The notes under the pieces are model-generated. The model was not told the origin of the DNA. It ran no database searches and worked only from the letters and a program-made list of their open reading frames with translations. Below are positions 53-63,547 of a stretch of 64,000 nucleotides of DNA, in pieces (the stretch's first letter is position 1; every line of letters starts with the position of its first letter). The position numbers were made by a program, and so were the translations under genes. The DNA is from Vitrella brassicaformis CCMP3155 (lineage: Eukaryota; Protista; Chromerida). Location: assembly GCA_001179505.1 (NCBI GenBank), contig CDMY01000227.1, positions 372,001 through 436,000 of the forward strand, given 5' to 3'.

Positions 53-1033
53 GTTGTTGCTGTAGCCTTCACGCTGGGCGGGCTCTATGCCTGTGCGGGC
101 TTGCTGCTGGTGTACCTGGCTGGCAACGACACTCACAGCCCGCCACTCGCCTACGACGACTGGTGGGAGGCCTGGGGCCTAGACTCCATCTCAGAGCCCC
201 AACTGGTGGCCTGCCTGTTCCTCAACCTGACCATCATGCTGCAGCTCTCGTTCCTCTCCTGCCGCAGCAAGACCTGGTGGTTCTGGTTCGACGGCAAGAC
301 CACCAAGGCGCCCTCGCTCATAGTGCTCATCCCACAGGTCGGCGCACTCGTCCTGGCGACCCTCCTCTCCGTCTACTGGCCGGCAGAGCTCGCACTCGGC
401 GGCGGCGCAACAATGGCGGGATGCGGGTGGGCTCACGCGGGAGTGGTCTGGCTCTACTCGGTCGTCGTGGTGCTCATCCTCGACGTCATCAAGGTGATCA
501 CCTACCAGATCTGGTGGGCCGCCACCGACAGCGAGACGCTCTTCTCCTCCCTGTGGCGGGACCCACATGCCGCCAAGAAGGAGGCTGAGAGAGAGGTGCG
601 TAAGCAGCGGCGACGGCTGGACAGCAAGCGGTTCACCAGCAAGGACTACATCCAGCGAAAGGTGGAGGACTGGGAGGAGGCCTCGCGGCAGGGCAGCTTT
701 GCGCCCTCTGAGTACTCGCGCCTCAGTCTCGCCATGGGCCCTCCGTCGGTCATGCGGTCGTCCTCTCGTCTGTCGACCGGTGCTGGTGCTGCTGGGGCAG
801 GTTTACGCGTGACGCCAGGTGGTCCAAGTGTGGCGGACGCACGGGTCCACAAGGTGCGTGGGGTGGGCAGAATGACAGACAGACGCATTGATTGATCTGG
901 ATGGATGGAGTGTCGTCGTATGGTTGTGTGTTGTGTGTGTCAGCTGGAGGCTCGTCTGTCGATGCTAGAGGAGAAAATGACCGAGCTGATTAGCCAGATG
1001 AAGGTCCTGGCAGCCGCATCCATGAGAGACTGA
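53..1033 (+). CDS. Plasma-membrane P-type (IIIA) H+-ATPase, last two exons (53-853, 944-1033); 5' part lies outside the window
   Basis: C-terminal TM helices with LFLNLTIMLQLSFLSCRSKTWW and CGWAHAGVVWLYSVV..LDVIK, resembling PMA/AHA TM8-10. AG acceptor at 51-52, GT donor at 854, final exon LEARLSMLEEKMTELISQMKVLAAASMRD*. Confidence 0.75.
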
Positions 1034-1106
1034 AGGAAAGACTCGGCCGATGAGTGTCTGAGTGGCCAGTGAGGGCGATCTGGGTGTGGGGGAGGGGGAG
1101 GGAGGG

Positions 1107-1406
1107 NNNNNNNNNNNNNNNNNNNNNNNNNNNNNNNNNNNNNNNNNNNNNNNNNNNNNNNNNNNNNNNNNNNNNNNNNNNNNNNNNNNNNNNNNNNNNN
1201 NNNNNNNNNNNNNNNNNNNNNNNNNNNNNNNNNNNNNNNNNNNNNNNNNNNNNNNNNNNNNNNNNNNNNNNNNNNNNNNNNNNNNNNNNNNNNNNNNNNN
1301 NNNNNNNNNNNNNNNNNNNNNNNNNNNNNNNNNNNNNNNNNNNNNNNNNNNNNNNNNNNNNNNNNNNNNNNNNNNNNNNNNNNNNNNNNNNNNNNNNNNN
1401 NNNNNN
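1107..1406. other. Assembly gap (300 N)
   Basis: N run flanked by G-rich tracts. Confidence 1.
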
Positions 1407-2327
1407 GGGAGGGAGGGGGGAGGGGGAGGAGTCTGTTGGTGGTGTAGATTAGCTAGCTGGCCGGACCGGACGACCAACTAGATAGAGCTTGTGTACGTAC
1501 CTGTGTGTGGTCGTAGTAGGGGGTGCTCCCGTAGCAAGCTTATCATATCAACCTACCTACGTGGCTAGCTTCCTACTGTTTCTGTTATGTCATTTGCCGT
1601 CAAGTGAGAAGCTCTGTAAGATGCGATCGATGCCTGTGATGCATGTGGGGTGCGTGGGGTGGGGTGCATGGCATGGGATGGGATGGGTAAGTGCGTTTTA
1701 TCGCATCGCATACAAACGTCACATCGTGTGGCCTGGATGGAGGCAGGCAGGGCTGCCATGCCATTTTTTCTCTTGAAATTTGTCCCATGTGTCTGTCGAT
1801 ATGTAGCAATTGACGTACGCCGGCGTACAGTGCACGTGAACTTTCTGTTTTCTTCCCCAACTCTCACACACAGATAGTTTTTTCGGGACCCACCTCTCTC
1901 TCTCTCTCTGAGTGTGTGTGTGTGTGTGTGCGTCTGATGCCCGAGTGTTGTGCCGTTTTGGCAGCCAGTGAGGTTTTCTGATATCTGGGGTTGTTTGCCT
2001 GCCTGCCTGGCTGGCTGGCTGGCTGCCTGGTGGATTGGTTTATTTCCTCAAGTCAGTGACTGAGTGAGTGAGCAGTGGAGACAGACGAACGTTATTCAGT
2101 GACACTGTGCTGTTTGCAAACACATCGCAAGTACTGAAGTAGCTGAAGGGCGACCCAGCTACGCGACGCCACGCTACGCTAGGCTAGGCTGCTGTGGCAT
2201 TCAGTGGACTGACTGTTTTCATGTGTGTGGACGGACGCCTGCTTGCAAGCAGGCACCTTTGAGGAATAATTCGCTCAAGCAAAAGTGTGTGTTGTCCCTC
2301 ACGGCCATCCATCTACCATCTGTCAAG

Positions 2328-3773
2328 TCAGCCCTCCCCCTCCCGCCCCTCACTCTCACTAGGACCCACATAGCCGTTGACCACACCATCGCCACCAACA
2401 CTACCACCACCACCACCACCAGCAGCGGGCGATTCTGGCGGACCGCTCTGACGATAGAGGGCCTCTCTCGCCTCCTGACATCACACACACCACACACACA
2501 GAGATACCGAGGCGGGGGAGGGTGAACGAATGGTGACTGTGTGTCTGTGTGTGTTGGTTGGCTTATCGATACGGACGTCTCTCATTCTCTGCAGGTAGGG
2601 CTGCCCCTGGTAGGTGAAGGGTACGCCATGCCTCTCCTCGAACTCCGTCAGCTCCCCCATCAGCACGTCGTCCAGCTCAGACAGTTGCCCGATGGTCTGC
2701 TCGATGTCCGCACCGTTGGTGGTGGCGGTGGCGGCGGCTGGTTCGTGAGGGTGGTCTGGGGGTGCGGCGACGAGTGTCTGGAGCCGCTGCTGCAGCTGCT
2801 GCCGCTGCTGCCGCTGGGTGATGCGGCGGAAGAGCGGTAGCCGGTTGGACAGCTGCCGACACTCCGACTCATAGACCTGCACACTCGCATGGCCAAAGGC
2901 GTGTGTGCGTGTGTGTGTGTGTGTGTGAGGAGAGGGGTGTGTGTGGGTGTGTGTGTGTGTGTCTCACGTTTTGGAGCTGAGGTGTGTAGGGCATGACGCG
3001 CTCGCAACGCAGCACGAAGTCCAATATCTCGTCGCCTGCAGTGCAGTGCAGTGCGCAGTGCAGTGCACACAATCCATCCATCCGTCCATCCATCCACAGC
3101 TGGCTGATGAAGCATCCATCCATCCATCCATCTCCCACTCACGCGAGTGTGCACGCTTACGTGGCACGTCGAGTGTCTCCCAGAGGCTCTGCAGCGTGGC
3201 CCTGAGCTCCGGCCATGTCGCTGACATGCTCCCACCCCCCACAGCAGCCCCACCTCTCGCCTCATGGGCAGACCTGCTCTCGGTCATCAGCTGCCGCCAC
3301 CATGAGAGAAGAAAAGGTCTGGGTGGGGTGTGTGTGAGTGTGTGTGTGTGTGTGTGGTGGCTACCTCTCGTTCGTCGTGCTGCCGCTGTTGGTGTATGTG
3401 TTGAGAGAGCCTCTCGACCTTGGCCGCACAGGCGTCCTCCATCTCACCCACGGCCTCATCATAGCTGCCAGATACACAGCCACCACAGACATACTTTCTT
3501 CCATGGCATGGACCACACACATACAGACAGACACAGGGATGACGCCCCTCTCTGTGTGTCAGCAGGGCAGGGGGCGGGGGCGGGGGGGATGTGGTGTGCT
3601 CACTGTTGCTGCGCTGCTTGCTGGTAGTCGATTCGCCACTTGGCGAGTGCCATCTTGAGTTTGCGGATCTTGGCGAGGAGTGCGTCCTTCTCCTCGCCCC
3701 ACAGCCGCTGCACTCGCTGCAGCTCGCTCTCATATGAGCGACACTGACACCACACACACAACCGTATACGCGC

Positions 3774-3810
<37 letters not shown>

Positions 3811-6426
3811 TGGATGGGTGCGTGAGTGTCGGTCGGGTACCTACCTACCTGTGCGTCATGGTGGTGTTTGATCTTGTGGAGTTCCTGCTCGTATCTGAGC
3901 CTGGTACCCTGCTCGAACGACTGCAGTGCGGTTAGCTGCTGCTGCGACAGCTGCTGCAGCTCCGTGACCCAACGGCGGTCCGTCTGCTCCGAGATGGCTG
4001 ACGCCTCGTCGAACTCTTGCTGCACTTACACACACACACACACATCCATGGGGTGGGAGGGGAAAGGGGGGATGGGTTACCTTGAGTTGCTGCAGCTGGT
4101 TGGTGTAGTGTTCCTCGAGCTGTGAGTCGATGCGCGTCGTGGCTTCGGTCTGCAGCCGGTCCCAGTCCTGCCGCAGACCCTCCAGCTCCTTCTCATACCT
4201 GCACACACGCGCATCGTGGAAGGAAGGATGCGCCAGTAGTCTGTAGCCAGCCTGCCCGACGCCTAGCTACTTGAAGCAGGTCTTCTGCTCCAGCTCGTAG
4301 AGGCTCTCAACATGCGCCTCCGCGCGACGACGCTCCGAGGCAGCCTACCACCCCACCCCACAGTGACCACACCATTAGCTAACACATACACACACAGCCA
4401 TGGACACACACCCAGACGGACCTTCTCGTCGAGAGTCTTGATCAGCTGCCCGAGCCTGTCGTTGGCGGCCCTGTCCTGCTCCTCCCTCATGGCCTCGATG
4501 TGCGCCGCACACCGCCGCTGCAGCTCCTGCTCGAAGTGCACCCGCTCGTAGTGCACGCGACGCACCTCCTCGCCCACTAAGGTTGCCTGCACCACCCAAG
4601 GGACCAGACCCATGGCACGTGTGTTGGGAGGGGAGGGTGTTGGAGGGATGCGGCGCCGGCTGGTGTGTGTGTTTGGTTGCCTGTTGTTGCGTTTGCTGCT
4701 CCATGTGTTTGATGAGTCTCTGTTTCTCCTCCTCGTGTGCCGCCTGAGTGGCGTCGAGCAGCTGACGGTACTTGGACAAGACCGACTGCTCCACGGACAG
4801 ATAATGCTGCACACAGATAGATAGACACAGACAGACAGACAGACCGACAGGCGGACAGGGAAACGCGCGAAGGGGTTGTGGGGCTGTGTGGTCCTGAGTC
4901 AGTCGTGTGTGTCATGTGTTGTATATGTGTGCGTGTACCTTACCTGGTCGATTTGCTGGAGCTTGTGCATGGCCAGCGTCTGCTCCTTCTCCCAAAGGGC
5001 CAGCTGCTCACGGTGGTGGGACGCAAGCAGCGCATCCACCTGAACACACATCTATTCTACTCGACACACCCGTATGGTATGTGCAGGTAGGTCAGATGGC
5101 TGACCTTTTCGGTGTAGGTCTGCACAGACCTGGCGAGGTCAGTGCTGTAGAGGCCCTCAGAGCGGCCCCACGTGTCGGCCAGCTTGGACAGGGCATCCTC
5201 CTGAGCGATGGATAGATAAACAGGATGCACCGGTGCGAAGCCAAGGAGCGGTACACACCTCCTGCTGCCTCCACTTCTGCTGGTGGGTGACCATGCGCTC
5301 GTCGAAGTCAGCCTCAATCCTCCACACACACACACACGCACACACATACACACGCCCACATGGACTCATCAAGACAAATGGACTCGGCATCCATGCCATG
5401 TGTGCGTCGGTCTTCTCACTGTTTGGCCTTCTCCCGTGCGTTGTGTTCGAGGGCCTCACTGAGCTGCAGAAACTCTTTCTTCAGCTCAGTCTGTAGCTGC
5501 ACGCCACCCACCCCACCCCACGCCATCACACCCACCCACACACACACACAGAGAGAGAGAGAGATGGGTGCCCACACCACAGACGGGAGGGTGGCTGCAT
5601 CACGCACAGCACAGCTACACACATACATACCCGCTGGTCTTTCTCCTGCAGTATCTTGGTTCGCTCCCGCTGCCACCTCTGCTTGAAGTCGACCTCCAGC
5701 CGATGGCGCGTGGAGCCTACACTCGCCTGCAGTGCAGTCCCAATGCACAGGGAGGGATGCTTCCTTCCGGGCAGATGTACTTGCCTTGCGCTCGTCCACC
5801 CACCCAGCCACCGACCTGTTGCTGCTGCACTTTGCCCTGGAGCTGCGACAGCTGACGGGACTCATCCAGCAACGCACTCTGAACAACGCACCAACAGAAC
5901 AAACCAATGCACACGCGCATCGCACCCCACCTCCCTCTCTTCGCACCTTGATGCCCTCCAGAGTGCCGCCCGCCTCCATCTCCCCCTCCCCCTCCCCACC
6001 CACAATTGGCCCATCCTCTGCCATAGGTGGTGGTGATGGCTGGATGCGTGTGCCACGGTGAGGTGATGGCGCCTTGGCCTTCGCAGCAGATGCAGCAGGC
6101 GGACTGAAACAAGGAACGAGGGAACACACATGAGCGCATGGATTTCTTCTGGCTTCCTTTGGTTCTGCTTACGGCGGCGGAAAGTCTACAGGGGCTCCCT
6201 CGCCCGTCAGCACAAAGGGCTCGCGCTCAGCACCGGCCATCTCACCCAGATCTGCCCTTCCCTTGTCCATCTGCTGCTGGCGCTGCCACGGGCCTCCCCT
6301 TTCGTCTACTGGCACTTCCGCTTGGCTGTCCGTATGCGAGCGGGGCAGGGACTCATCGCTGCGGTGGGGAGATGCAGCCGCAGATCTCTCCGTCTGGGCG
6401 CCCCTTCCATCATCTGAGGACCACAT
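2328..6426 (-). CDS. Multi-exon long coiled-coil protein with a C-terminal MAP65/ASE1/PRC1-like region
   Basis: ATG at 6426 (MWSSDDG), donor CCGCC|gtaagc at about 6171, many E/Q/R/L-rich coiled-coil exons. Spliced C-terminus ELRATLQSLWETLDVPRDEILDFVLRCERVMPYTPQLQNVYESECRQL...LSELDDVLMGELTEFEERHGVPFTYQGQPYLQRM resembles the PRC1/Ase1 spectrin region. Stop TGA at 2328-2330. Confidence 0.55.
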
Positions 6427-6543
6427 CCGCCGCCGGACTAAAGGCGATAGAGGGGATGCGCTCTGACTCGAGACTGGGGGCGCCCTAGGGGGCGGGCGCC
6501 TTTCCCTCCGACGAGTCTTATCGTGCTAGTGCTTAGCCTACCG

Positions 6544-6845
6544 ATGTCTCCAAAGTACGTGCTCATCGTCCTTGTTTGCCTGCTATCGTTGGCACTCTTT
6601 GCCTCCGGCCAGTCATACGCAGGCAACTACAAGTACGGGTACAAGAGACGACGACGCAGCCAGCGCCGGAGCAGCCAAAGGGGCAGAGGGGCGGGCCGGG
6701 GGAGCAAGACCCTGCGCGACAGGCTGAGGTACCGGCCCTATGAGAGCCCCAGCAGCCCCGACTTCGACTGGAGCTCGTATGCGTTCGGGAGGCCGGGTGG
6801 CCGGGGAGTGACCTTGTAAGCAGCGCCAAGGATGGACGAGGCAGC

Positions 6846-6880
<35 letters not shown>

Positions 6881-7247
6881 CACACTACTCACGGTCGCAT
6901 GCAGGCAAACTCTGCTCATGGTGTGTCTGTGTGTGTTTCTGTGTCTGTCTCCGCGTGTGTGTCTGCCTTCTTTTCAGTGGCGCAGGAGGGCGGTCTGCGC
7001 GCGTGGTAAGCGTTCTTCCGGCAGCTCAGCTCGCTGCACGCAGGCCGCGTTGGTCTCATTTTTTTGGTTTGTTGTATGTGTGCCCCCGTAGGCTGTTCCG
7101 GCCAACTGCGTGCCGAAGCACGGGCTTCTGTCCATTCGCAAGATCGCCGCCTCCTTCCGGGCCGACCCCAATGTGTACAGGAGAGAGCTCGACTGCCGGG
7201 GGGCGGCCAGCGGGACACGATACTACAACGCACCTGGCGGATTCTGA
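6544..7247 (+). CDS. Small secreted basic protein (about 150 aa, 3 exons), unknown function
   Basis: Signal peptide MSPKYVLIVLVCLLSLALFASG followed by an Arg-rich tract. Exons 6544-6815, 6978-7005 and 7092-7247 join in frame via TT|gtaag..cag|T and GTG|gtaag..tag|GCT. Last exon AVPANCVPKHGLLSIRKIAASFRADPNVYRRELDCRGAASGTRYYNAPGGF* has high GC3. Confidence 0.7.
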
Positions 7248-7990: not shown

Positions 7991-8448
7991 CTAAGTGCCC
8001 GGATCCGGCGGCTTTGCCGATATGGACAAAGCGTGCACGCCTGCCTTGATCTCATCGTCGAGTATCTCATAGATGAGCCGGTGGCGCTTGATCATGGGCA
8101 CATTCGCAAATGCAGCGCTCTCCACCATCACTCTGCAATGCATCCATGGACACGCGGCGCACACACAGCACAGCACAGCATTCCAGAGGTGTCTGGAGAG
8201 CACTGCACTTCATGCTGTACTTGAAGTGTGTTTCTTGTTTCCTGTCAAGGCCTTTCATCGCCGCGTGGCCAGCATGGAGATGGCTCTGCAGCAGACACAA
8301 GCGCACACAATGAGTGCAATGCCTTCCGTTCATCTGCCCGGACCTCGTCGACGATCTCAAGCTTCGTTGGAGTCAATTTCTCCGTGAGCTTTCTCTCAAT
8401 CGCCTCATAAATGGGTCCCTTTGTCGCCATACTGCTGAAACGGCGCAT
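7991..8448 (-). CDS. bolA: BolA-family protein, probably mitochondrial (BOLA1-like)
   Basis: Spliced IERKLTEKLTPTKLEIVDESHLHAGHA...ETHFKVMVESAAFANVPMIKRHRLIYEIL..EIKAGVHALSI contains the BolA motifs. N-terminal MRRFSS resembles a mitochondrial presequence. Confidence 0.93.
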
Positions 8449-8517
8449 TCGCAGCGGCGATCCACCTGCAAGCTTAGCTCGCAGAGGAGGGAAAAGTGAA
8501 GAGGGGAAGAGAGCGTC

Positions 8518-9348
8518 ATGGCGATTAAGAAGACACGTCAGCGTGTCTACAAGAAAGTCCGGAGAACCCCGAAAAGTCTACACAGGTGAGATGCGTCACT
8601 GACTGTGACTGCAGCGTCATAAACTGCAACGTTCCATGCTTGCTGTCTACAGGAGGCGATTCGACGTCAAGAAGAGCATGCGAGACCCAACTATGGTCAG
8701 AAGAGAGGAAGATGAGACCTCGACAGACATGCTTCTTTTCCTCACTGGTCCGTTTGTTGCGTGCGCAGAAGAGCCTGTGGGATGATTCCAAGACGGTCAC
8801 GCAGAACCTCGCAGCCACCAGCGTGGCCGCCTTCGCTGAACAACTGCCGGAGAAGATCCCCAAATCAGTGCCAAAGAAGTAAGCACGAAGGAAAGGGGCG
8901 TTGAGGCGGGCGTCTGAATGCGTATTAGTAACTGACTTTCAGGCTGTCAGAGTGGGACGCTCCTATCGTCAAGAAGCTACACGAAAAGCACGGGGACGAC
9001 TACAAGGTGGGCCAGCCACTGAATACCCCCCCGCGCATGCATGGCTGCACCTCAATCGCCTCCGGTGTGTCTTTGTTGGTTGTGCAGGCGATGGAGCGCG
9101 ACATCAAGGTGAACGTGCTACAGTGGACTGCGGCAAACATCGAGAAAAGGGTGGCCAAATGGAAGAGAAACTACGTGTCGGGTCTGCCAAAAGGACCTGC
9201 CCAGAAGGATGACGGCAAGGGGCAGCTGGGGGGGCGTGCGGCCGAGAGTGACGTGCAGATGGCGGAAGGCGAGCCCAAGGAGGTGACCAGGGCTATGCGG
9301 AGAAGGGAGAACATGAAGCTGAGGAAGATGATACTGACAAGAAAGTGA
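8518..9348 (+). CDS. NOP16: Ribosome biogenesis protein Nop16
   Basis: Basic N-terminus (KKTRQRVYKKVRR), W(D)DSKTVTQNL, and KLHEKHGDDYK|AMERDIKVNVLQWTAANIEKR, matching the Nop16 HGDDYKAMARD..LN..Q.T signature. Confidence 0.85.
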
Positions 9349-32981: not shown

Positions 32982-33016
<35 letters not shown>

Positions 33017-50074: not shown

Positions 50075-50269
50075 GGTCGAACGAGATCTTCCTTGACGCA
50101 GCCTTCAGCTCGCACCGACAGCCTAGGGTAGCTCTGAAACCGCTGCTGCGACAGCCGTTCGCTACAGGAACTGTTGAAGGACGGCGCTCCTCCAACAACT
50201 TGATCTGCATCCGCCCTGAAGGTCCTTCCGTCAGATCTGCCATCTGCCTCATCAGCATCGTCACGCGAC

Positions 50270-51341: not shown

Positions 51342-51641
51342 NNNNNNNNNNNNNNNNNNNNNNNNNNNNNNNNNNNNNNNNNNNNNNNNNNNNNNNNNNN
51401 NNNNNNNNNNNNNNNNNNNNNNNNNNNNNNNNNNNNNNNNNNNNNNNNNNNNNNNNNNNNNNNNNNNNNNNNNNNNNNNNNNNNNNNNNNNNNNNNNNNN
51501 NNNNNNNNNNNNNNNNNNNNNNNNNNNNNNNNNNNNNNNNNNNNNNNNNNNNNNNNNNNNNNNNNNNNNNNNNNNNNNNNNNNNNNNNNNNNNNNNNNNN
51601 NNNNNNNNNNNNNNNNNNNNNNNNNNNNNNNNNNNNNNNNN
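51342..51641. other. Assembly gap (300 N); flanks share 16 bp
   Basis: tcagctgcaagcgggg appears immediately on both sides. Confidence 1.
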
Positions 51642-53176: not shown

Positions 53177-53182
53177 CCACCG

Positions 53183-54656
53183 ATGGATGAGTCAGCAACT
53201 GCAAGCGAGTCCACGGTGACTCGCTTGCGAGTCAGCAACTGCTGGGCGTATAAGACACCCTCAAGCGAGAGGGGGCAAGGTCCCCGTGAGGTTGAGAAAT
53301 CGTTGGCCGGCGTTGCGAGCTCAGAGAAGGGGAGAGAAGGGAAAGAGGCAGAGGACGTCGAACGCGCCCCAGCCTCAAGGTTTCCAGCCTCAAGGATGGC
53401 GTCATCGTTATCGCTGGAGGCGAAGCTGAAGCGCTTCAGCCTCTACTCCTCCCTCATGGACAGATATCTCGGCAGCCAGGCGTCCCACGACCAATGCGAC
53501 AGCACCGACCGCCATCTAGCGGGCGGCACCACCGCCCTCGACCAGGTCACCACCGTCCTCACCTTCCAGCGCTCCATCTCGGACAGCAAAGTCGCACGCC
53601 ACGCCCTTGCCGGCTCTGCATGCAGCGACCTGGTCGTCAGCGGCCTCTCGCGCTCCTTCTCGGTGGCGTCGACGAGCGGCAGCCCAAACTCGGTCGTCTC
53701 ATCCGGCAAGGGCGGCCGATCGGTGGTGTCCTTCTCTGAGGGCAAGGGCGCATCGCCCAATGCTGCGATGACGATGATGGACGTGTGCCGCAGCGGGAGC
53801 AGTCCCAGCATGGGGGAGGGGTCGGGAGGAGAGGGAGGAAGAGGGGCAGGGGGAGGGGCAGGGGCGGCAGGTGGTGGTGTGGGTGGGGAGGGGATAACGA
53901 TTGAGAGGGCGCGGACGTTCAGTGGGTTTGACAAGATGGCGGTGAATGAGAAGGCAACCAAGGCGCTCAAGGAGTCGCTCGGCATCCTCGTCCAAGCAGG
54001 TGTGTGTGGCGAGCACACAGGGGGGAGCAAGGATGTCCACATTGGAGGATTCTGTATTTGTGTGTGTGTGTGTCAGCGGCGGGTTCGAAGGCCATTTCTG
54101 CGACCGACCTGAGGTCACTTGAAGTGACGCCAGACACACCCGAACGCACACCCTCTGCATCATCCAAGTAAGGCAAGCCAGGAGAGTCACCCAGGCCGAC
54201 AATGAATGAGTGGATTCACACCCACCCTGTTCGTTGGTCCGTTCGTCCCCTCTTCTCCCTCCCGCTCACAGATTTGATAAGAAGGACAGCCAAGACACCT
54301 CCCCCACCCCCAAAGACACCTTTCCCACCCAGGCCAAACGTACCATCATCATCCACGAGGACGGCAGCGCACAAGACACCTCTCACCAGCACCAACCACC
54401 GTCGCAGCACCAGCAGCACCCCCACCCCCACCCCCACCAGCACCACGGCAGTCCATTCCCGGATGGTCCCAGCCCCTCCAAGACACGCACCGGTCGGCCC
54501 CCCTTCAGGACACGACCTTACGGCCACCACCCTCATGGGCACATGGGACGTGGCGGGGGCTACGGTGTGCCGCATCACCACCACCACCACCACCATGAGG
54601 ATGCAGACGGCGGAGGCAGGGGGTCGTTCCGCATGAAAAAATACAGGCGCGGGTGA
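53183..54656 (+). CDS. Hypothetical Ser/Gly-rich protein with a His-rich basic C-terminus; true start uncertain (possibly MASSL at about 53396)
   Basis: GC3-rich open frame, introns at about 54000-54076 and 54167-54270, stop after RGSFRMKKYRRG. Confidence 0.55.
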
Positions 54657-56482
54657 GTGGCGGATGGAGCCTGGGAGAGGGGGAGGGGGGCGTGCTGTAT
54701 ACATGTGTGTGTGTGTGTGTGTGTGTCTGTGTGTGTGGTTTGCCGTTTGTTGTGTGATTTCTGTTCAGAAAGAATTACATCCGTGACGACCCCATGAGTT
54801 GATCGATGGTATGTGTGTGTAGTGGTGGGTCAGTCGGTCGGTGGCTGCGTGTGGCTGAATGGTTGCGTGCGTAAGGGGTCGTTTCGTTGAAGTGTCGATA
54901 ATATACGTTACCTTTCTGTCTGCCTGCCTCCCACTTGCGATGTACACATACACACGGTTGCGGTGATGCAGCGAGCATATCTACGCCCTCATTTGCACGT
55001 TGTCAGTTTCAAACCGGTTTTGACGTGTTCAGCCACTCGGATGCCTTCGTATGTGGGTGTGGGTGTGGGTGGTACTTTCCTTTTTCTTAACATGGCCTCG
55101 GTGTCGGTGTCAGTGTCGGTGTGTTCTGTCGCCTTTTTCTCCCGATTGAATGAAGGCCTCACTGACGTACCTGCCTGCATAATGCTGCTGGATGGAGGGA
55201 TGGCTGCTGATTTGAAGGCCAATGGGTATCTGTGTGTGTGGGTGGGTGTGCATGTGTGTGTGGATGAGAGTGTACGTTCATTTTTTCCCCAGAGGTGGCT
55301 GTGCTGTGCTGCGATGACTAACTGGAGTGAGAGTGAGAGTGCGGCTGGTGCTATTTGTCTCTCTCTGGGTGCGTGTGGCTGGCTGGCTGGGTGTGCGCAT
55401 GACAATGATTTCAAGGACACGTGGCGGTTTAACAGTGGTGGCTGGACGCACACACACACCACCACAGACACACTCGACTTGGCCAACCTGATGGATGGAC
55501 ACATCGCACGAGCAGTGAGTGTGCCTGTTTTTGGCACCGACCGTTTTCCATTCACTATCGCAACCTGGCTGAGCTGATTGACCCCCTGACTGGTAGGGTA
55601 GGCAGAGGCGGCCGACAAACAAACCTGCAGTGTAGACAGAGCTACCCGCAGAACTGATGGCCTCACTGACTGTGTTGCATGCGCTGGCCCGTTTGTTTGT
55701 GTCGCGAAGGGAGGAAGGCGTAGAGTCAGTCAAAGCAGGAAAGCTGGCAGGCACAGAACGGGACGCGCGTGTGGGCGACTACCTGGCGATAGCTGTTTGC
55801 ACGAAGATCGTTCGTACGGTGTACTTTACGGCTTGTTCGGCTTAATTCTCTCAGCCACGTCGGCTGCACACGTCGGTCGGCTGGTGGCTCTCGATGTAGA
55901 CGGAGGGTGTTGACGCATCCTCTGTTCGCATAAGACCACTCCTGCCGACGTGTGCGGCTGATGTGGAAGGGACGGTAGCCGACTACTCACTCACTCCAGA
56001 GACTGACGACTGCCTGCCTACCTGTACCTGCCTTGCGCACCCGTACACAAAACAAATGTCTGCCTCTCTCTTACGTGAGGGGCGCGTGGATGATTTCGGA
56101 CTTTTTGCGTCATTCATTCAGCCCTTGTTTGTGGGTGCGTCTGTGTGTGAGTGATGGCATGAATGGCTGGCTGCCTCGAAGGGGCGGAGGGAGTGGAGTA
56201 CGTGTGTGGGCTGGGGTGTCTGTCGTAGGTCGGTTTCCTAGGCTAAGCTGGGTAGGGGGATGTGTGTTGCCTTGTGTTGCGTTGCCTTGTGTTGTGTTGG
56301 ATGGACGGCCCGTGGAGTGACCGTGTACAAGTACGTGTGCAGTGACCACAGACAACGCAGGATCGATCCACCCGATATATATATAAAGGTGTGTAATGAA
56401 TGCCCCCTTCTCCCCCAATAAAAATGATGTGAAGCCGCTAACACAGAATAGCAACCGATCCACACGAGAGAGAGCATCCTTG

Positions 56483-59400
56483 TCAGTTGCCCAGCTTGAG
56501 CTGCGTGTCTGCCTCTACAATGGTCTGCAGCTCCCGCGATGACCGCCGCCCATTACTCAGCCGCGAGCTGCTTTTCCGCCACGACCGACGCCGCCGCCCA
56601 CCGCCTGGCTCAACCATCTCCAGCTCACGCACCTTCTCAACCACCTCCTGCAGACACACACACACACACACACACGTGGACGTGTCTCTGTCGATCTGTC
56701 TGTCTGTCTGTGTGTGTGTGCGTCTCTCTCAGTGTCTCGGGCCGACGCACCTTGAGTTTGCCGGCGTCGATGGTGGAGAGGTCGGTCCTGACGGGGAAGT
56801 GCCAGTCGGACGGCGTCTGTCTCAGCGCCCCTATCCTCTCGCCCTCCTTGTGCAGCGCCCACGTCATGGCCATGCGGTCATAGCCAGCCGTCAGGATGCA
56901 ATTGGCATTGGCCACCACCTCGAGGCTCGTGATGGCGTCCGTGTGGGCCTTCCAGCTCCGCACTCTGGCCACCACCGGCCCCTGGCAGAGCGTCTCGAGC
57001 GACCGGCGTGAAGAGGTGGACACGGCGGCTGCTGCGGCCTTGACGGACATCTCGCTGTGCTCCCTGGCGTCCTCGTAGATGACCCTGTGGGGGTACCAGT
57101 CCCTCTTCACCTCCAATGGCACTATGCCGTCGTACCTGTGTGATGTGACCCAGAGGCGACACGAGGCGACACGACACCCCACATTCATTCATGGAGACGG
57201 ACGGCCATCGGTCTGTCTGGCTGTGTGTGTGTGTGTGCCGCTAACTCACCGGAAGAGCCTGCCAATGTCCCACACGCGAATGAACCCCTCCTCGTCTCCA
57301 GTGAAAAGCAGCATGCGCAGACCAGAGGGCACCTCACGCACCACAGGAAATGGGCGCCCCTTGCTGTGTGCCAGCGCCCCCCGCCGCTGTCCCCCGTCCG
57401 CCGACGCAGGCGTCTGCAGCAGCGAGCTCTTGCCAACCGGGGATGTGACGAACGTGCTCTTCCTGGGCGCCCGAGAGCTGTGCGAGTTGATCGACGACGT
57501 CATGACCCGCGACTTCTTTTTGTCTGCCCCTGACACCCTCGTCCGCGATCGGCCCTTCCTCAGCGACGTCGTCCTCTTGCCCCCGGGGGCCGCCTCATCC
57601 CCTCCGCTCACGTCAGCGCCATCTGTCGCATGGGCGTCGGCGAGCCTCACAACTGACCCGTGAGGGCCTTCGTGTGCATTGGCTGCTGTCAGCTCGCCAG
57701 CGGCGTGTGAGCTGTGGATGGTGGCCTGGGATGAGTCTGACTGTCGCGTGTGTGTGGCGGCGGACGGGTGTGCGGGGTCGGCTGCGTCTTGCGGGGCCGA
57801 GGGGGGCTGGTAGAAGAAGTCCATGCACTGAATCGGCACCGCTGACTCAAGACTCTGCACACACTCATTCACATAAATGTAGGGGACACGCAGCTTTCTC
57901 TTCCTTTCTCTCTTTTTTTCTCTTGTGACTTACGTGAAGATTGAGGAATCTGGTGAGGAGCACGGTGCCGTTTCTGGCCTGCCTGGCCTCATTGTCGAGG
58001 ACCCTCTCTGCGAGGGGGTGTGGGGGGATGAGCCAGAGGAACACCTGCCCCAGCTGGTCGGCAGAACACAGCAGGGGAAAGGGCTCCAGTATGCGCAGGC
58101 ACGTCGGCTCGGCCTGCAACAAGAGAGCCGATTCACTGTCGAGTGGGCGTTGTGCTGTCAATCAGTGGGTGGGTGCGTGAGTGGTTTGGCTGCCTGGTGT
58201 CCGAAGAGCTCAGCGACTCTCTTCATCTTTTCGTAGCTCCAGACGACCACGATGCGGTCGGTGGATCCGGTGGCGATGAGACCCAGCCGCCGCGAGTAGG
58301 CGCAGCACGTGATGTCTCCCGCATGCGCGTTCGCTATCCGACGCCACACCTGCACACAGACAGACACCCACACCTAGATTATCTACCCGTCTTGTGGCCT
58401 GGCCTAGATAGATGATCGTGTGTGTGTGTTGTCTCACTTTTGGCGTGGCGAGTGATCCCTCTGATCCCTCGTCATGGACCACCAGCGACTTGTCCCATGA
58501 CACGCTCAGCAGACAGCGGTCGCCGGGGCAGTATACAAGACCGCTCACCTCAGCCCTGATATGATGAAGAGACAGACAGACATGCCCAGACACATTCAGA
58601 CACGAACGAGCGTGAGACAACGGAACTCACATTGACTGACCTGTGTTTGGTGAGTGTCCTGAGGTAGTAGCCCGTCGATGCGTTGTAGACGGCGATATTG
58701 CCCGCATGGTCAGACACAAACAGCTGACGACAATACGCATGCAATGCAATGCAATGCAATGCAGCACACACAGAACAGAACAGACGCACACTTTCGCATG
58801 GCATGGATGCCACTAGCCTCACTGCCACACAGCCCACCTTCCTGCCTCTGTCGTCGATGCAGAAGTCGGTGATCTCGTGGCCGCCCTTGTGCTGGATCGA
58901 GTGCTTCAGCTCGCCCGTCGACGCGTCCCATATTCTCACGTGGTTCCCACCCGCCGTCATGAAAATCCGCAGCTTCGCGTTGTACAGCGCCTGTGAGACA
59001 AGCAAGACACACAAACCGACAGACAGACACGTGTTGTTGGGGTGGCAGCAACTGCAGTAACTGCAGTGGAGGTCGGTTAGGTTACTTACTTTGATGAGTG
59101 GATGGTCGTCGCTTTCCTCTGGCACGCCGGTGCGCTCAAAGTCGAAGGCGAGGAGCTTGCGGCCCGCGCAGACGATGCGTTTGTGCTTCAGCACTGCAGC
59201 GACGGACCTGAGCTGCGGCATTTCGTCGACAAATATGGTTTGCAGGCACGAGTAGTTGGTGAGGTCCCATGTCTTGATGCAGCCATCGGTGTCTGCCGAC
59301 ACAACCTGACCTGCACACACAGAACAGACACACAGAGAGAGACAGAGACACGGGAAGAGACACAGAGAGAGAGAGAAGCGTGTGTGTGCGAATGAATGAT

Positions 59401-59573
59401 CAAACTAGTCGCTTACCTACCTGTGCCGGGTCCGAGTGACTCGATTTTGATGATGGGTGCGAGGTGTCCCTTGATGGTGTGGATGGCCTTGCCCACGTAG
59501 GGATTCCAGATGAACAGCTGGTAGTCAAACCCACCCGTGATCAACAGCTGGATGGATAAATCACATCCATTAC

Positions 59574-59604
<31 letters not shown>

Positions 59605-61659
59605 GGGAGGGAGGGAGGGAGGGAGGAGTCACTGCTCATCGGTTGATCGCCCCTCTCCTCTCCTTTCTCTTGCTTGCTGACCTTGTTTGCAGGCGAGAAG
59701 CACATTGTCCTGACGCCCCTTTCATGGCCCTCGAGCTTTCGCTTCAGCTCGCCCGTCGCCGCATCCCATATGTAAACCTGCACACAAGCCAAGCCGGCAG
59801 ACATCCCATCCCAAGCAGGCAGGCAGGCGGGCGGCTGCGCCCCTCCATCCATCTTCGCTACGTACGTGACGTGCGCACCAATTTGTCCATGGCGCACGAG
59901 GCGAGCTGTTCGAAGGAGGGCAGCTCGAGGAGGTCGACCACTATGTCGAGGTGCTGCCGGATCTGACGCCAGCTGATGAACTTGTGCCACAATTCCATCA
60001 CACCAACCGCACTCCTCCTAACTCACCAACACACAGACACACAGAAACATCTGGATTGCGGATTCATGTGTGTGGCGGTGTGTCTCCGCTTACTCGTTTG
60101 CGTGTGTGGTTGGCGAGTCTTCGTATGGGTTGGCGATCGCTCGGATGTCCCAGGCAAAGATGGAGCCCTCGTGGTCGCCGCTGAACAAAGTCTCACACGA
60201 CTGAAGAAGGCCACACAACACACCACACACCATCACAGAGAGACATCTCACTCACCGGATGCTTTCACTGACCGAACCGACCGTGGAGCAGCAGAGCGCC
60301 AGTTGAGAGGTGCGTGCCTTGAATGTCTTGATGACTTTGTAGTCGTTGTCTGTGTCGTAGAAGGTCAAAGAGAGGTCGTTGCACGACGTCACCAGCAGGC
60401 TGTACTTGGCGATGAACGCCACTGCCAGCAATCCCGCTTTCTGGTCTCGCAGCTCCTTCTTGGGAGTCAGCTCGGGCGTGAACAGACGCAGGTACCTGCC
60501 AGACACACGCATGTGTGCATGTGTGTGTGTCTGATGTAGGTCTTCTCAGGCGCCTTTTCCTTTTCTCACCAACCGTGATCCCTGTTCAAAGAAGGCGAGC
60601 ATATCGAAGCCATTGCCGCAGAAGTAGTACACCCGCTCGATATGCGCCGCGTGTGGCGTGTCGTCCTGGTGGTGGCTCTTGAGCAGCCGTATGGCGCTGA
60701 ACTCCTTCATGACGTCCTGCCCCTTCCCACGGTCGACAATAAACCCCGTCAGCTCCTCCCACGACATGGTCTTGCCACCGTCGATGTCAATTAGCTCAAA
60801 CAGATCCATCAGACGAGCCGTCACGTGCAAGTCGACATCCTCCTCAAGGATCTCGTCCTCGATCTCCTCTTCATCGATCTCGCTCATGGCGCATTGCCCG
60901 TCCGGCAGCACGCCCGAGGCGCTGCCGTCTTGCTGGAGTGGTTGGGGGGCGGCTGGTGGGGGGGAGGGGAGGCCGGATTGGGGCTGAGTTGGCTGCAGCT
61001 GCAGCTGTCGAGGGTTGCTGACCTCTTGTTTCTGCCGCCTGTTGCGGGCGGCCGCTTCGCGAAGCTCATCGAGGAAGCCCGTCCAATCCATGTACTTCTT
61101 CATTATGTACCTGAGAGAGAAACAGACGCCACGGCACTCTTGGGTATGTATCTGTTTTCGTTCCCGTGGCTTTTGGCCATTCGTTCATTCGGGGCTCACA
61201 CACTCACTCACACGAATTCGTCGATGGCGACATTGTTATTGCGGTTGAGGAACTCCTCCTTGATCATGGTGATCCTGTCCTGGTCCACCCGCGCCAGTAT
61301 CTCCAGCTGGTCACCGCCCTTGTGCGGCCCCTCCCCCTCCTCCCCTCCCGGCAACGCACCCGCCCCACCAGAGCCCACCTCGACAAGAGCGCCGTGGGCC
61401 TCCTCGAGTGGCCCTTTCTTGCCGTGGGCCCCGCCCTCGCTGCGCTTCGGGTCGGGGAAGAGGGGATGCTGTCCGTCCTCATCGACTTCGGTGAGAAACG
61501 CACACTCGGAGAATTTCTGAGGCCAAGAGGAGGAGGAGAAAAATGCCTGTCTGTCTGTCTGCCTGTCTGTCCGCTGACCTCGAGCAGCACTTGCCACGTG
61601 GTTGTCTTGGGTTTGTCTTCCAGGATATCCGTGGCCAGCGATTGGGCGGTGGGCGCCAT
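56483..61659 (-). CDS. EF-hand + WD40-repeat protein (WDR49/EFCAB8/CFAP337-like, probably ciliary)
   Basis: EF loop LFELIDIDGGKTMSWEELTGFI. Many WD repeats (LEGHERGV, GHLAPIIKI, IKTWD, AHAGDITCC, AHTDAITSL, GFIRVWD). About 20 exons. Confidence 0.8.
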
Positions 61660-61831
61660 GGAAGGCGCGAGGGACAACGCCTTCATCTCAAGAGGTCAGT
61701 TGAACAATCGCCATGCCCTCAGAAAACTCATTGCAGATGGGGTGCGGGCTTGCTGGGCACGTCAGAGTGTGTCCCCTGGCTTGCATAAGGCAGCAGGCAC
61801 CTTTTTTCTCTTTCCCTTGCCGATCCATATC

Positions 61832-61846
61832 GCGAGCTAAGCTCGC
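61832..61846. promoter_or_regulatory. Palindrome GCGAGCT-A-AGCTCGC in a divergent promoter (candidate TF site)
   Basis: Perfect 7-bp arms. Related copies at 8471-8482, 38897-38908, 21382-21389, 6531-6537 and 24333-24350; half-sites at 35588, 35599, 46956, 50107 and 53315. Confidence 0.5.
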
Positions 61847-61945
61847 TGCGGTGAGGAGGAGAGAAACGCACACGGTGGCTTAAGGCGGCAATACGAACGG
61901 CCGCGTTGCCCTGATTGGTCCGCCTTTGATTCTCTCATAGATCTG

Positions 61946-63547
61946 ATGGAAGCGTCGAGTCGTTGGTACGAGGCGTACGAGGAGTCCACCGACTGGCTGA
62001 CCCATCAGACGGTCACCCTCTTCCATCCCCAGCTCGTCCACATCTCGCCCCGCCCAACAGAGACCTGGCCCCTCGTACCTCTGCGCCACGCCTTTCTCAT
62101 CGCACTCGCCTACATCGCATGGGCGGTGTTCGGCGTTTTGCTCAAGGTCAGCCGCAGGAGGCATGGCGATAAGGGAGCCGGGGAGAGTGAGGAGAAAGAT
62201 GGCGAGTATGCGGCGACGGGCGGCGACGGGCTGGGGCGGAAATTCGCGCGTGAGCCGCTGCTGCTGTTGCAGGCGGTGTATGACGTTGTCCAGGTGAGAA
62301 CGACGGGATGCAATGCGTCCACAGATCTGTCGGCTTGTGTGTGTGTGTGTGTGTGGCACAGGTAGGTTTGTGCAGCGTGATGCTGTTTCAGACCATCGAT
62401 GTGTGCTGGCGGGAGGGATACAAATTCTACCAAAACCCGTTCAGGACTCACGGAGCCGGTCAGCACGCCACAGAGAGAGAAGGAGCGAGGGAAGCACACA
62501 CAGCCACACTCGCACGCACACCTACCTCTGTGTCTGTGTGTGCTGTCTGTCTGGGCGCAGGGTTGGCGCCTGTCCTCTGGCTCTTCTACGTGTAAGTAAG
62601 CGTGCATTCATTGAGTGAGTGCATCGACCCGCCCATGGGCTCTCTTCTCACCGCCCACTGTCCTTCCCTCCCTTCTCCTTTTGTTGCTTTCATGGTGCCT
62701 GCCTGCCTGCAGGTCCAAGGTGGTAGATTTCTTTGACACGGTGTTCATAGTGGTGCGCGGCAAGTGGCGGCAGCTGAGCTTCATCCACGTCTACCACCAC
62801 CTGATGACATTCGTCGTCTACTGGATCAGCGTGCAAACCGCATACGACTCGGACATCTACCTAACCATCGCTGCCAAGTCAGTCAGTCAGTCCGTCTGTC
62901 AGTTAGCCAGTCTGTCTGCCACGCACCCACCCACCGATCGACAGACAGACAGACAGACAGGGAGAGAGGGATGGGGGCATGGGATGCTTATGGTATGGTG
63001 TGGTGTGGTGTGCAGTTCGTTTGTGCACGTGGTCATGTATTTCTACTACCTCATGCGCACCCTCGATGTGCCCGTCCCCCGAGTCATCAAGAAAAACATC
63101 ACCAACCTGCAAATACTGCAGGTCAGTGAGTCGAGTCGACCGCTGAGCTGACACTTCGGCCGTCGACACGCACACGCACACGCTGTCATCTCGCCCTCTG
63201 TGTGAACCGGTCGGTGTGCTATCTGTCTATCTGTCGTCGATATATCAGTTCATCATGATGGAGGTGCAGGGGTTCTCGATGCTGGTCTTCGGCACGCCTT
63301 TCCCCATCCGCGTGTGCCTCCTCTACTGCAGCTACGTCGGCACACTCCTGGTCCTCTTCGTGGACTTTGCCGTCCGCACATATGGTAGGTAGGTACGGCC
63401 AGCCGAGCCGCCCCGCGCCCAGCCAGCCAGACAGACAGCCACGGAGTGCATTCATTCATCAGACAGACAGACAGACTGGCATAGATGGACGTACGTTTGT
63501 TTCCATCAGGTCCCCGAAAGCCGAAAAAGATCGACAAGGCCGAGTGA
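61946..63547 (+). CDS. ELO/GNS1/SUR4 fatty-acid elongase
   Basis: SKVVDFFDTVFIV, FIHVYHH (HxxHH), NSFVHVVMYFYY, ITNLQILQF, Lys-rich tail PRKPKKIDKAE*. Confidence 0.95.

What the first reader, a model, noticed from the sequence alone, without database searches (positions are those of the whole stretch)
53..63547. Strict strand alternation: the whole window is built from head-to-head gene pairs
Order of the intact genes: ATPase+, coiled-coil-, secreted+, BolA-, Nop16+, CapA-, Tudor-like+, HDAC-, pirin+, hypothetical-, SBP+, Mkt1-, F-box+, Asterix-, NRAMP+, TMEM185-, GST+, VMA21-, BTB+, renalase-, hypothetical+, WD40-, ELO+. That is 22 of 22 adjacencies switching strand; the only break is the degenerate 41.6-45.3 kb locus. 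Random orientation would give about 2^-22. Divergent start-to-start gaps are short (117, 69, 545, 180, 89, 521, 293, 485, 195, 6 and 286 bp), while convergent 3' intervals are mostly 0.5-2.8 kb. This suggests a genome organised as bidirectional-promoter units. I do not know whether this is already reported for the lineage.
Basis: partly seen in the sequence, partly recalled or inferred. Interest (0 to 1): 0.8.

Follow-up and report, generated by a model that had tools for sequence, protein, structure and literature searches.

The report
Alternating head-to-head gene pairs, Vitrella
In this 64-kb piece of the alga Vitrella brassicaformis, 24 genes switch strand at 22 of 23 junctions, forming back-to-back pairs on short promoter spacers; this is a real and extreme case of a weaker orientation bias that the genome paper mentioned in one sentence without data.

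Summary
The window is Vitrella brassicaformis scaffold C227:372001-436000. It carries 24 protein-coding loci, and 22 of 23 neighbour junctions switch strand (binomial p = 2.9e-6).

- **Evidence:** spliced RNA contigs, two annotated proteins, Pfam hits on single exons and my own gene finder show that each strand block is one gene.
- **The one break:** it is a recent duplicate of a gene 72 kb upstream, split by an insert and apparently silent.
- **Spacing:** divergent ATG-to-ATG spacers have a median of 273 bp. Convergent intervals have a median of 875 bp and are 3' UTR where RNA covers them.
- **Assembly gaps:** all four N gaps sit at G/C homopolymers in convergent intervals.
- **Promoter word:** ten of eleven divergent spacers carry AGCTCGCA, and RNA 5' ends lie just downstream of it. 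Other agents of this scan had already found this word on other DNA of the genome.
- **Not a strict rule:** the adjacent, unselected 200 kb gives roughly 65-80% switching, with real same-strand neighbours.
- **Prior report:** Woo et al. 2015 stated the head-to-head excess, "data not shown".

This is a new quantitative variant of a known kind of organisation.

The parts
1..1033 (+). 3' part of a P-type ATPase gene. The CDS starts about 3 kb upstream of the window; the stop is at 1033.
   Evidence: Own gene model with 10 exons and coding score 300. Upstream exons hit E1-E2_ATPase, Hydrolase and Hydrolase_3.
2328..6270 (-).
   Evidence: Own model with 18 exons and coding score 174. No Pfam hit.
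6544..7247 (+).
   Evidence: RNA contig L026 is spliced here with a + strand GT-AG intron at 6816-6977, and its ORF ends at 7247.
7991..8448 (-). BolA gene (103 aa).
   Evidence: Pfam BolA, E = 3.8e-13. L026 shows a 103-aa ORF with two introns on the - strand.
8518..9348 (+). Nop16 gene (181 aa).
   Evidence: L026 shows a 181-aa ORF carrying PF09420, with four + strand introns. Pfam on a single exon, E = 4e-4.
9877..12576 (-). CapA / PGA_cap gene (439 aa).
   Evidence: L026 shows a 439-aa ORF carrying PF09587; of its 17 joints 15 are - strand GT-AG and 2 unresolved. Three exons hit PGA_cap in colinear order.
13122..16690 (+). Its 3' UTR reaches at least 17969-17997.
   Evidence: L026 and L028 carry a single 855-aa ORF with ten + strand GT-AG introns. 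No Pfam hit.
19465..21261 (-). Histone deacetylase gene.
   Evidence: Pfam Hist_deacetyl, E = 2.6e-17, on exon 19678-19980. Own model score 67.
21813..23581 (+). Pirin gene.
   Evidence: Pfam Pirin, E = 1e-4. Own model with 10-11 exons and score 62-65.
26056..27637 (-). 426-aa gene without known family (P0002), 5 exons.
   Evidence: P0002 maps at 98-100% identity to 27637-27266, 27197-27048, 26964-26830, 26752-26609 and 26553-26059.
27727..29457 (+).
   Evidence: Own model scores 65; the ATG at 27727 is taken from the ORF list. No Pfam hit.
31421..35165 (-). Mkt1/XPG-like gene, 14 exons.
   Evidence: Pfam XPG_N and XPG_I, both about E = 7.5e-7. Own model score 262.
36094..37305 (+). Its transcript starts before 35600, has two introns ahead of the ATG taken here, and its 3' UTR runs to about 38.2 kb.
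   Evidence: Five + strand GT..AG joints seen in four runs. The longest ORF of the RNA-defined exons is 301 aa, 36094-37305.
38181..38791 (-). Asterix-like gene, 4 exons.
   Evidence: Two CT..AC joints are listed and a third intron follows from the contig pieces, matching the model. Pfam ASTER gives only E = 0.06.
39085..41165 (+). NRAMP gene.
   Evidence: Pfam Nramp, E = 1e-68. Four + strand GT..AG joints.
41543..45077 (-). The only break in the alternation. It is a duplicate of the gene at C227:341302-342990, split by a 1.7-kb repeat-derived insert (42670-44395) that is flanked by a 120-bp direct repeat.
   Evidence: 93% identity (41543-42665) and 77% identity (44396-45038) to the upstream copy; the insert matches C336 and C1057. 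RNA-like runs hold only about 0.4 of the words of 35500-45400, which the neighbouring transcripts alone explain. There is no promoter word in the spacer 45078-45512.
45513..46530 (-).
   Evidence: Own model with 3 exons and score 61-62. The family name is not confirmed.
47007..48848 (+). GST gene (369 aa, 9 exons).
   Evidence: Spliced contigs L034-L036 carry a 351-369-aa ORF with GST_N families.
49655..50074 (-). VMA21 gene, one exon.
   Evidence: Pfam VMA21, E = 1.9e-13. It lies on the same RNA contigs as GST+.
50270..51067 (+). BTB gene.
   Evidence: Pfam BTB_2, E = 2.9e-14. The stretch 51068-51945 has no coding signal in any frame.
51890..53176 (-). Renalase-like NAD(P)-binding gene, one exon, 428 aa.
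   Evidence: The exact product lies on contigs L001-L004 and carries PF13450.
53396..54802 (+). 369-aa gene found only in Vitrella in this search (P0001).
   Evidence: The annotated Vitrella protein maps to 53396-53998 and 54270-54653; the weaker match at 54073-54234 (65% identity) leaves the middle exon unresolved. It starts at ATG 53396.
56483..61686 (-). One long WD40 gene, about 17 exons.
   Evidence: The three pieces of my first parse are joined by in-frame canonical introns read by eye, and they merge in the stricter parse. WD40-type hits lie in two of them and a WD-like 'IRVWD' stretch in the third.
61946..63547 (+). ELO fatty-acid elongase gene.
   Evidence: Pfam ELO, E = 2.4e-14.
8467..8483 (.). 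Back-to-back pair of the promoter word (TGCAAGCT T AGCTCGCA) in the 69-bp BolA-/Nop16+ spacer.
38896..38903 (-). Promoter word AGCTCGCA pointing to Asterix-. The RNA 5' end is at 38892; the NRAMP+ 5' ends are at 38938-38984.
53314..53321 (-). Promoter word pointing to renalase-. The RNA contig 5' ends are at 53305 and 53317.
50107..50114 (+). Promoter word in the VMA21-/BTB+ spacer, pointing to BTB+.
35588..35605 (.). Face-to-face pair of the word in the Mkt1-/F-box+ spacer.
51342..51641 (.). Spurious N gap at a poly-G run. The flanks overlap by 16 nt.
   Evidence: Contig L033 bridges it.

Best explanation
The window is a very compact stretch of the Vitrella nuclear genome. Its genes are laid out as divergent pairs that start from short promoter spacers (69-928 bp between start codons) and end tail-to-tail in longer intervals.

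**Shown.**
- The gene order and the strands.
- One gene per strand block in the stretches covered by RNA or by annotated proteins.
- Transcript contigs that run unbroken across divergent and convergent junctions.
- An oriented 8-mer, AGCTCGCA, concentrated in divergent spacers, with RNA 5' ends 0-10 nt downstream of it.

**Inferred.**
- Each spacer holds two closely apposed core promoters, sometimes as an inverted pair of the word, which fire in opposite directions.
- In a genome where about 87% of the sequence is transcribed (by the published genome statistics), this layout is favoured. It lets a promoter region serve two genes and keeps a promoter away from a terminator, which limits transcriptional interference.
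- New insertions, such as the duplicate at 41.5-45.1 kb, break the pattern.

The window is an extreme run within a general but not strict bias. I estimate that about 65-80% of junctions switch strand in the neighbouring 200 kb.
For: - **Count:** 22 of 23 junctions switch, p = 2.9e-6.
- **RNA:** spliced contigs with strand-matching GT-AG introns.
- **Proteins:** one annotated protein (P0001) and one database protein (P0002) map to the claimed strands.
- **Pfam:** single exons hit the expected families.
- **Spacing:** divergent median 273 bp against convergent median 875 bp, p = 0.0013.
- **Promoter word in 264 kb:** 21 of 26 exact copies lie in divergent gaps, which are 11.7% of the sequence (p = 1.6e-11), and none lie in convergent gaps.
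- **Promoter word in the window:** 10 of 11 spacers carry it.
- **Whole genome:** 69 back-to-back and 39 face-to-face exact inverted pairs, against 0 for the reversed control patterns.
- **Flank:** 41 of 55 junctions switch (p = 2e-4) in the parse that merged the window's split genes correctly.
- **Literature:** Woo et al. 2015 report the head-to-head excess and a median intergenic distance of 92 bp. Their genome table gives 9.16 Mb of intergenic DNA out of 72.7 Mb.
Against: - **The flank estimate is soft.** It depends on how same-strand pieces are merged. It is 41/76 = 0.54 in the over-splitting parse, 0.67 after merging pieces less than 250 nt apart, and 0.75 in the strict parse.
- **Real same-strand neighbours exist in the flank**.
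- **The contigs carry no strand information.** A contig across two genes does not prove overlapping transcripts.
- **Direct pairs of the word (130 loci) are as common as inverted ones**. So the inverted pairs do not by themselves prove two-way firing.
- **Not measured:** co-expression and chromatin.
- **My coding model can misjudge the strand.** It scored one real exon (36859-37305) higher on the wrong strand, so weak genes supported only by that model are less certain.
Confidence: 0.75

Rival explanations
1. Chance. Orientation in Vitrella is random and this window is a lucky run picked out after the fact.
For: The window was chosen because it looked striking. My most fragmented parse of the flank gives 41/76 = 0.54.
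Against: Random orientation gives p = 2.9e-6 per window, or about 0.003 such windows among roughly 1136 in the genome. The fragmented parse demonstrably over-splits: 15 of its 35 same-strand junctions are less than 250 nt apart, and four of its five same-strand calls in the window were false. The promoter word is confined to divergent gaps. Woo et al. report the bias.
Confidence: 0.04
2. Reading artefact. The reader took each same-strand run of ORFs for one gene, which produces alternation by construction. Several blocks would then really hold tandem genes.
For: A reader without tools cannot separate tandem genes from exons. My own first parse split the Tudor-like and WD40 blocks. This caveat does apply to the more than 100 similar unchecked notes on other windows.
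Against: In this window the blocks are single genes. There is an 855-aa single ORF on spliced RNA. CapA, Nop16, BolA and GST are single ORFs on RNA. P0001 and P0002 each span their block. The WD40 pieces are joined by in-frame canonical introns. The ORFs of 152 and 182 aa in the UTRs have no coding signal.
Confidence: 0.06
3. Strict rule. Alternation is obligatory across the Vitrella genome, and apparent exceptions are only pseudogenes or gene-model errors.
For: The one break in the window is a disrupted, apparently silent duplicate. At least one 'tandem' gap in the flank (-49570 to -45373) hides + strand coding signal behind an inverted pair of the word. Many other windows were noted as near-perfect.
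Against: The flank holds same-strand neighbours from unrelated families with short gaps and no opposite-strand candidate between them. Examples are the tRNA synthetase and its neighbour (383 bp apart) and LMWPc followed by BTB (477 bp apart).
Confidence: 0.07

Closest known systems
Head-to-head excess in chromerid genomes (Woo et al. 2015, eLife 4:e06974, PMC4501334)
   Same: Same organism and same phenomenon. Closely spaced (<1000 bp) neighbours are head-to-head more often than chance, and the median intergenic distance is 92 bp.
   Different: It is stated in one sentence with 'data not shown'. It gives no switch rate, no mention of runs of 20 or more alternating genes, nothing on the tail-to-tail complement and no promoter motif.
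Bidirectional-promoter gene pairs of mammals, yeast and plants (general knowledge; Woo and Li 2011 as cited)
   Same: Two genes on opposite strands start less than 1 kb apart from one promoter region.
   Different: In those genomes such pairs are a minority of genes (roughly a tenth in human, from my own knowledge). Here every expressed gene of a 64-kb stretch is in such a pair, and the spacers are as short as 69 bp between start codons.
Unidirectional gene arrays of dinoflagellates and kinetoplastids (Shoguchi et al. 2013 as cited; Amoebophrya, PMC7789003)
   Same: A strong, genome-scale, non-random gene orientation in related alveolates.
   Different: The sign is opposite. Those genomes change orientation 0.15-2.3 times per 10 genes, whereas this window changes about 9.6 times per 10 junctions.

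Membership tests
Bidirectional-promoter (head-to-head) gene pair | Two genes on opposite strands with their 5' ends facing each other. | tested here: met
   There are 11 such pairs inside the window. Strands come from splice-site direction on RNA contigs, annotated proteins and Pfam.
Bidirectional-promoter (head-to-head) gene pair | Start sites less than 1 kb apart. | tested here: met
   ATG-to-ATG distance is 69-928 bp in all 11 pairs. Contig 5' ends are about 50-90 bp apart for Asterix-/NRAMP+. True start sites were not mapped for the other pairs.
Bidirectional-promoter (head-to-head) gene pair | A shared regulatory element or a single nucleosome-free region. | tested here: inconclusive
   AGCTCGCA is present in 10 of 11 spacers, and three spacers hold closely spaced inverted pairs (two back-to-back, one face-to-face). 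Chromatin was not testable.
Bidirectional-promoter (head-to-head) gene pair | Correlated expression of the partners. | not testable with these tools
   Only contigs were available, and their depth cannot rank genes.
   The flank of 200 kb gives 41 switches in 55-76 junctions, with Pfam-distinct tandem neighbours.
Unidirectional or polycistronic gene arrays | Long runs of co-oriented genes. | tested here: not met
   The longest same-strand run in the window is 2 genes. In the flank it is at most 4-5 model pieces.

The most novel reading that the evidence does not exclude
Vitrella may have one of the highest neighbour strand-switch rates of any eukaryote (at least 75-85% genome-wide). The layout would be built from back-to-back core promoters defined by an oriented, start-site-proximal word AGCTCGCA, and kept by selection, so that mostly recent insertions and duplicates break it. 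That would make it a natural model for how genome compaction and promoter two-way firing shape gene order.
Probability: 0.3. Interest if true: 0.7.

Novelty: new variant of a known kind. Interest (0 to 1): 0.5.

Why it matters
Gene orientation is close to random in most eukaryotes (from my own knowledge). It is strongly one-directional in the related dinoflagellates. A free-living relative of apicomplexans in which most genes sit in divergent pairs on spacers of 70-900 bp would be a clean system for several questions. Does two-way firing of promoters drive gene order? How do neighbouring genes avoid interference when transcripts abut or overlap? What defines a core promoter in this lineage? 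For annotation, it also warns that runs of alternating 'genes' read from raw sequence can be an artefact of merging same-strand ORFs, and must be checked with RNA.

Tried and rejected
- **More genome sequence.** Only 200 kb of flank could be analysed.
- **Official annotation.** It is withheld: the look-up of encoding contigs leaves out records of this genome, and look-ups of P0001 and P0002 found nothing.
- **Failed look-ups.** The ORFs 26579-26995, 6544-6816, 24949-25377 and 54219-54704 had no exact product on record.
- **Metagenome scan.** A scan for an exon of the 426-aa gene found nothing. A word search on that exon also found nothing, because the real protein is longer than the length limit. 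The representative search then found it.
- **Keto skew.** G+T minus A+C marks 3' UTR direction, but it is too noisy inside genes and in 24.3-26.0 kb to decide anything.
- **The '6-bp' spacer.** The 309-aa ORF from ATG 53183 occurs only on an unspliced contig, and the annotated start is 53396.
- **Possible extra genes, rejected.** The ORF 36816-37217 (-) is the antisense shadow of the last F-box exon. The ORFs of 152 and 182 aa in 3' UTRs and the 110-aa ORF at 51613-51945 have negative coding scores in all frames.
- **Chimeric contigs.** RNA contigs joining 38961 and 40185 to 17.4-17.6 kb are most likely assembly chimeras (the cause, perhaps a shared short repeat, was not checked).
- **Papers.** No paper gives an orientation table for Vitrella, and none holds the promoter word.
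- **Spliced models.** They were searched exon by exon, by reference. In one search the RNA-defined exons were joined inside a script only to find where the frame opens and closes, and nothing of the joined sequence was printed or saved.

Full report
**Where the window comes from.** The window is G000:C227:372001-436000. The assembly has 72,700,666 bases in 1064 contigs. These are exactly the figures given for Vitrella brassicaformis CCMP3155 by Woo et al. 2015 (PMC4501334). G+C is about 58%. Genes have many short GT-AG introns.

**The N gaps, tested first.** The four runs of 300 N are at 1107-1406, 24000-24299, 30902-31201 and 51342-51641. Each is flanked by a G-rich, poly-C or poly-G run. All four lie inside convergent, non-coding intervals of the gene map below. 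For 51342-51641 the two flanks overlap by 16 nt, and the unspliced contig L033 reads straight across. That gap is therefore spurious. No reading frame crosses any gap. The stretch 51068-51945 has negative coding scores in all six frames.

**How the gene map was built.** No annotation of this genome is served, so I used four independent lines.
- **A self-trained gene finder.** It uses a three-periodic Markov coding model (GC at codon position 3 is about 80%), learned splice-site and start-site matrices, and a separate parse for each strand. I ran it on 264 kb: the window plus 200 kb upstream.
- **Pfam on single exons, by reference**.
- **Spliced RNA contigs.** One source was Logan contigs of four runs laid on 35600-41599. 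The other was contigs fished with the look-up of encoding contigs. For that I used intron-less ORFs, including meaningless ORFs inside 3' UTRs that a gene caller had nevertheless called.
- **Two proteins from the protein databases**, mapped back by tblastn: P0001, named as an annotated Vitrella protein, and P0002, found in the unnamed representative library.

Spliced models were searched exon by exon.

**Result for the window.** There are 24 loci, in this order:
- ATPase+ (to 1033)
- coiled-coil- (2328-6270)
- secreted+ (6544-7247)
- BolA- (7991-8448)
- Nop16+ (8518-9348)
- CapA- (9877-12576)
- Tudor-like+ (13122-16690)
- HDAC- (19465-21261)
- pirin+ (21813-23581)
- a 426-aa gene- (26056-27637)
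- SBP+ (27727-29457)
- Mkt1- (31421-35165)
- F-box+ (36094-37305)
- Asterix- (38181-38791)
- NRAMP+ (39085-41165)
- a disrupted duplicate- (41543-45077)
- TMEM185- (45513-46530)
- GST+ (47007-48848)
- VMA21- (49655-50074)
- BTB+ (50270-51067)
- renalase-like- (51890-53176)
- a 369-aa gene found only in Vitrella+ (53396-54802)
- WD40- (56483-61686)
- ELO+ (61946-63547)

Twenty-two of 23 junctions switch strand (binomial p = 2.9e-6).

**Is each strand block one gene?** This was the critical risk, because merging same-strand ORFs produces alternation by construction. My first parse did split two blocks. The evidence for single genes is as follows.
- The 8235-nt spliced contig L026 covers 6501-17969 without a break. 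It carries the Tudor-like gene as a single 855-aa ORF, CapA as 439 aa, Nop16 as 181 aa and BolA as 103 aa. Of its 34 joints, 31 resolve as GT-AG on the strand of their gene; three could not be resolved.
- The three WD40 pieces are joined by in-frame canonical introns and merge in the stricter parse. Two pieces give WD40-type Pfam hits and the third shows a WD-like 'IRVWD' stretch.
- P0002 shows that the weak 'hypothetical-' gene is a five-exon, 426-aa gene starting at 27637.
- P0001 confirms the + strand of the gene after the renalase-like gene. Its start is ATG 53396, so the spacer is 219 bp, not 6 bp.

**Possible extra genes were rejected.**
- The ORF 36816-37217 (-) is the antisense shadow of the last F-box exon. 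That exon is defined by the + strand intron 36774-36858.
- The ORFs of 152 and 182 aa in the 3' UTRs at 17.5 and 49 kb, and the 110-aa ORF at 51613-51945, have no coding signal.

Not covered by RNA here, and therefore resting on coding potential alone: 23.6-26.0, 29.5-31.4 and 54.8-56.5 kb.

**The one break.** The 'degenerate' locus is a duplicate of a gene 72 kb upstream (C227:341302-342990).
- Identity is 93% over 41543-42665 and 77% over 44396-45038.
- The two parts are separated by a 1.7-kb insert. The insert is flanked by a 120-bp direct repeat and has copies on other scaffolds.
- The stretch 41240-41546, just after the NRAMP stop, is an inverted duplicate from the same source region. RNA contigs of the NRAMP 3' UTR run on into the source copy.
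- RNA-like runs hold only about 0.4 of the words of 35500-45400, which the neighbouring transcripts alone account for.
- The spacer next to the duplicate has no promoter word.

I infer that a recent, probably silent insertion into a formerly convergent NRAMP+/TMEM185- interval made the break.

**Spacing.** Divergent ATG-to-ATG spacers are 69-928 bp (median 273). Convergent stop-to-stop intervals are 439-2774 bp (median 875; Mann-Whitney p = 0.0013). Where RNA is available, the convergent intervals are continuous 3' UTR.
- The Tudor-like 3' UTR reaches at least 17969-17997, and contig L031 runs to 18656.
- F-box+ and Asterix- share one contig.
- GST+ and VMA21- share one contig.

**Promoter evidence.** I compared k-mers in divergent and convergent gaps across the 264 kb.
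- AGCTCGCA (TGCGAGCT on the other strand) came out at 16 copies against 0.
- Of all 26 exact copies, 21 lie in divergent gaps, which are 11.7% of the sequence (p = 1.6e-11). Three lie in same-strand gaps next to a 5' end. None lies in a convergent gap.
- In the window, 10 of 11 divergent spacers hold a copy with at most one mismatch.
- RNA contig 5' ends lie 0-10 nt downstream of the word in its own orientation. For Asterix- the end is at 38892 and the word at 38896-38903. For renalase- the ends are at 53305 and 53317 and the word at 53314-53321.
- The 5' ends of the Asterix- and NRAMP+ contigs are about 50-90 bp apart.
- Genome-wide there are 69 back-to-back and 39 face-to-face exact inverted pairs within 4 nt, against 0 for the reversed control patterns. 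There are also 130 direct pairs. So the word clusters in all arrangements.
- After my own analysis I found that other readers and agents of this scan had already described the same word on other windows.

**Is it genome-wide?** The 200-kb flank was not selected by anyone.
- The number of strand switches there is 41 in every parse.
- The number of junctions is 76 in the over-splitting parse (rate 0.54), 61 after merging same-strand pieces less than 250 nt apart (0.67, which gives 310 genes per Mb, the published average), and 55 in the strict parse (0.75, p = 2e-4).
- The strict parse merged the window's split genes correctly, but it missed the small genes BolA and Asterix. So it still underestimates switching.
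- At least one 'tandem' gap in the flank hides + strand coding signal behind an inverted pair of the word.
- On the other hand, Pfam shows real same-strand neighbours from unrelated families.
- The share of exact word copies lying in divergent rather than same-strand gaps is 16 of 20 in the flank. This gives an independent estimate of about 0.8 (95% interval 0.56-0.94).

My estimate for the flank is 0.65-0.8. At such rates a window with 22 of 23 switches is expected a few to a few dozen times in this genome. The window is an extreme of a real bias, not proof of a strict rule.

More than 100 unchecked first-reader notes describe the same pattern on other windows. They are leads only, and they carry the block-merging caveat.

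**What is known.** Woo et al. 2015 state that closely spaced genes in both chromerids are head-to-head more often than chance ('data not shown'). They also give a median intergenic distance of 92 bp for Vitrella. Their table gives only 9.16 Mb of intergenic DNA. I found no orientation table and no paper holding the promoter word. Related dinoflagellates show the opposite, one-directional layout.

**Verdict.** This is a new quantitative variant of a known kind, of moderate interest.

Noticed in passing
window 8467-8483, 35588-35605, 38896-38903, 50107-50114, 53314-53321; genome-wide: The oriented word AGCTCGCA lies almost only in divergent spacers. RNA 5' ends lie 0-10 nt downstream of it. Exact inverted pairs occur at 108 loci and direct pairs at 130 loci in the genome, against 0-1 for the reversed controls. 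Other agents of this scan had already described it on other windows.
   Followed up: partly
divergent spacers of C227:172001-436000: The palindrome AGATCT (extended forms AAGATCT, AGAGATCT, AGATCTGC) occurs 27 times in divergent gaps and 2 times in convergent gaps. It may be a second promoter-region word.
   Followed up: no
window 1107-1406, 24000-24299, 30902-31201, 51342-51641: All four assembly gaps sit at G-rich, poly-C or poly-G runs in 3' intervals. The last is spurious, because its flanks overlap by 16 nt.
   Followed up: yes
window 41240-45077 and C227:341302-345045: A recent segmental duplicate: the gene body is 93% and 77% identical to its source, there is a 1.7-kb insert with copies on C336 and C1057, and an inverted 0.3-kb piece now follows the NRAMP stop. 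RNA contigs of the NRAMP 3' UTR continue into the source copy.
   Followed up: partly
window 6501-17969 (L026): One spliced 8.2-kb RNA contig runs through six genes on alternating strands. Neighbouring transcripts therefore abut or overlap at both divergent and convergent junctions.
   Followed up: partly
window 35600-36093: The F-box+ transcript has two introns (35785-35897, 35920-35995) upstream of the longest ORF's start codon (36094). An upstream ATG at 35687 opens a 162-aa ORF in another frame.
   Followed up: partly
window 36859-37305: In this real + strand coding exon the antisense frame scores higher than the sense frame in my coding model. This is a warning for strand calls based on composition alone.
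   Followed up: no
window 17448-17650 with 38961 and 40185: RNA contigs in four runs join the NRAMP region to the Tudor-like 3' UTR. These are most likely assembly chimeras; the cause (perhaps a shared short repeat) was not checked.
   Followed up: no
flank, window coordinates -49570 to -45373: A 4.2-kb 'tandem' gap holds + strand coding segments (scores 10-17) downstream of an inverted pair of the promoter word. This is probably a gene that my finder missed.
   Followed up: no
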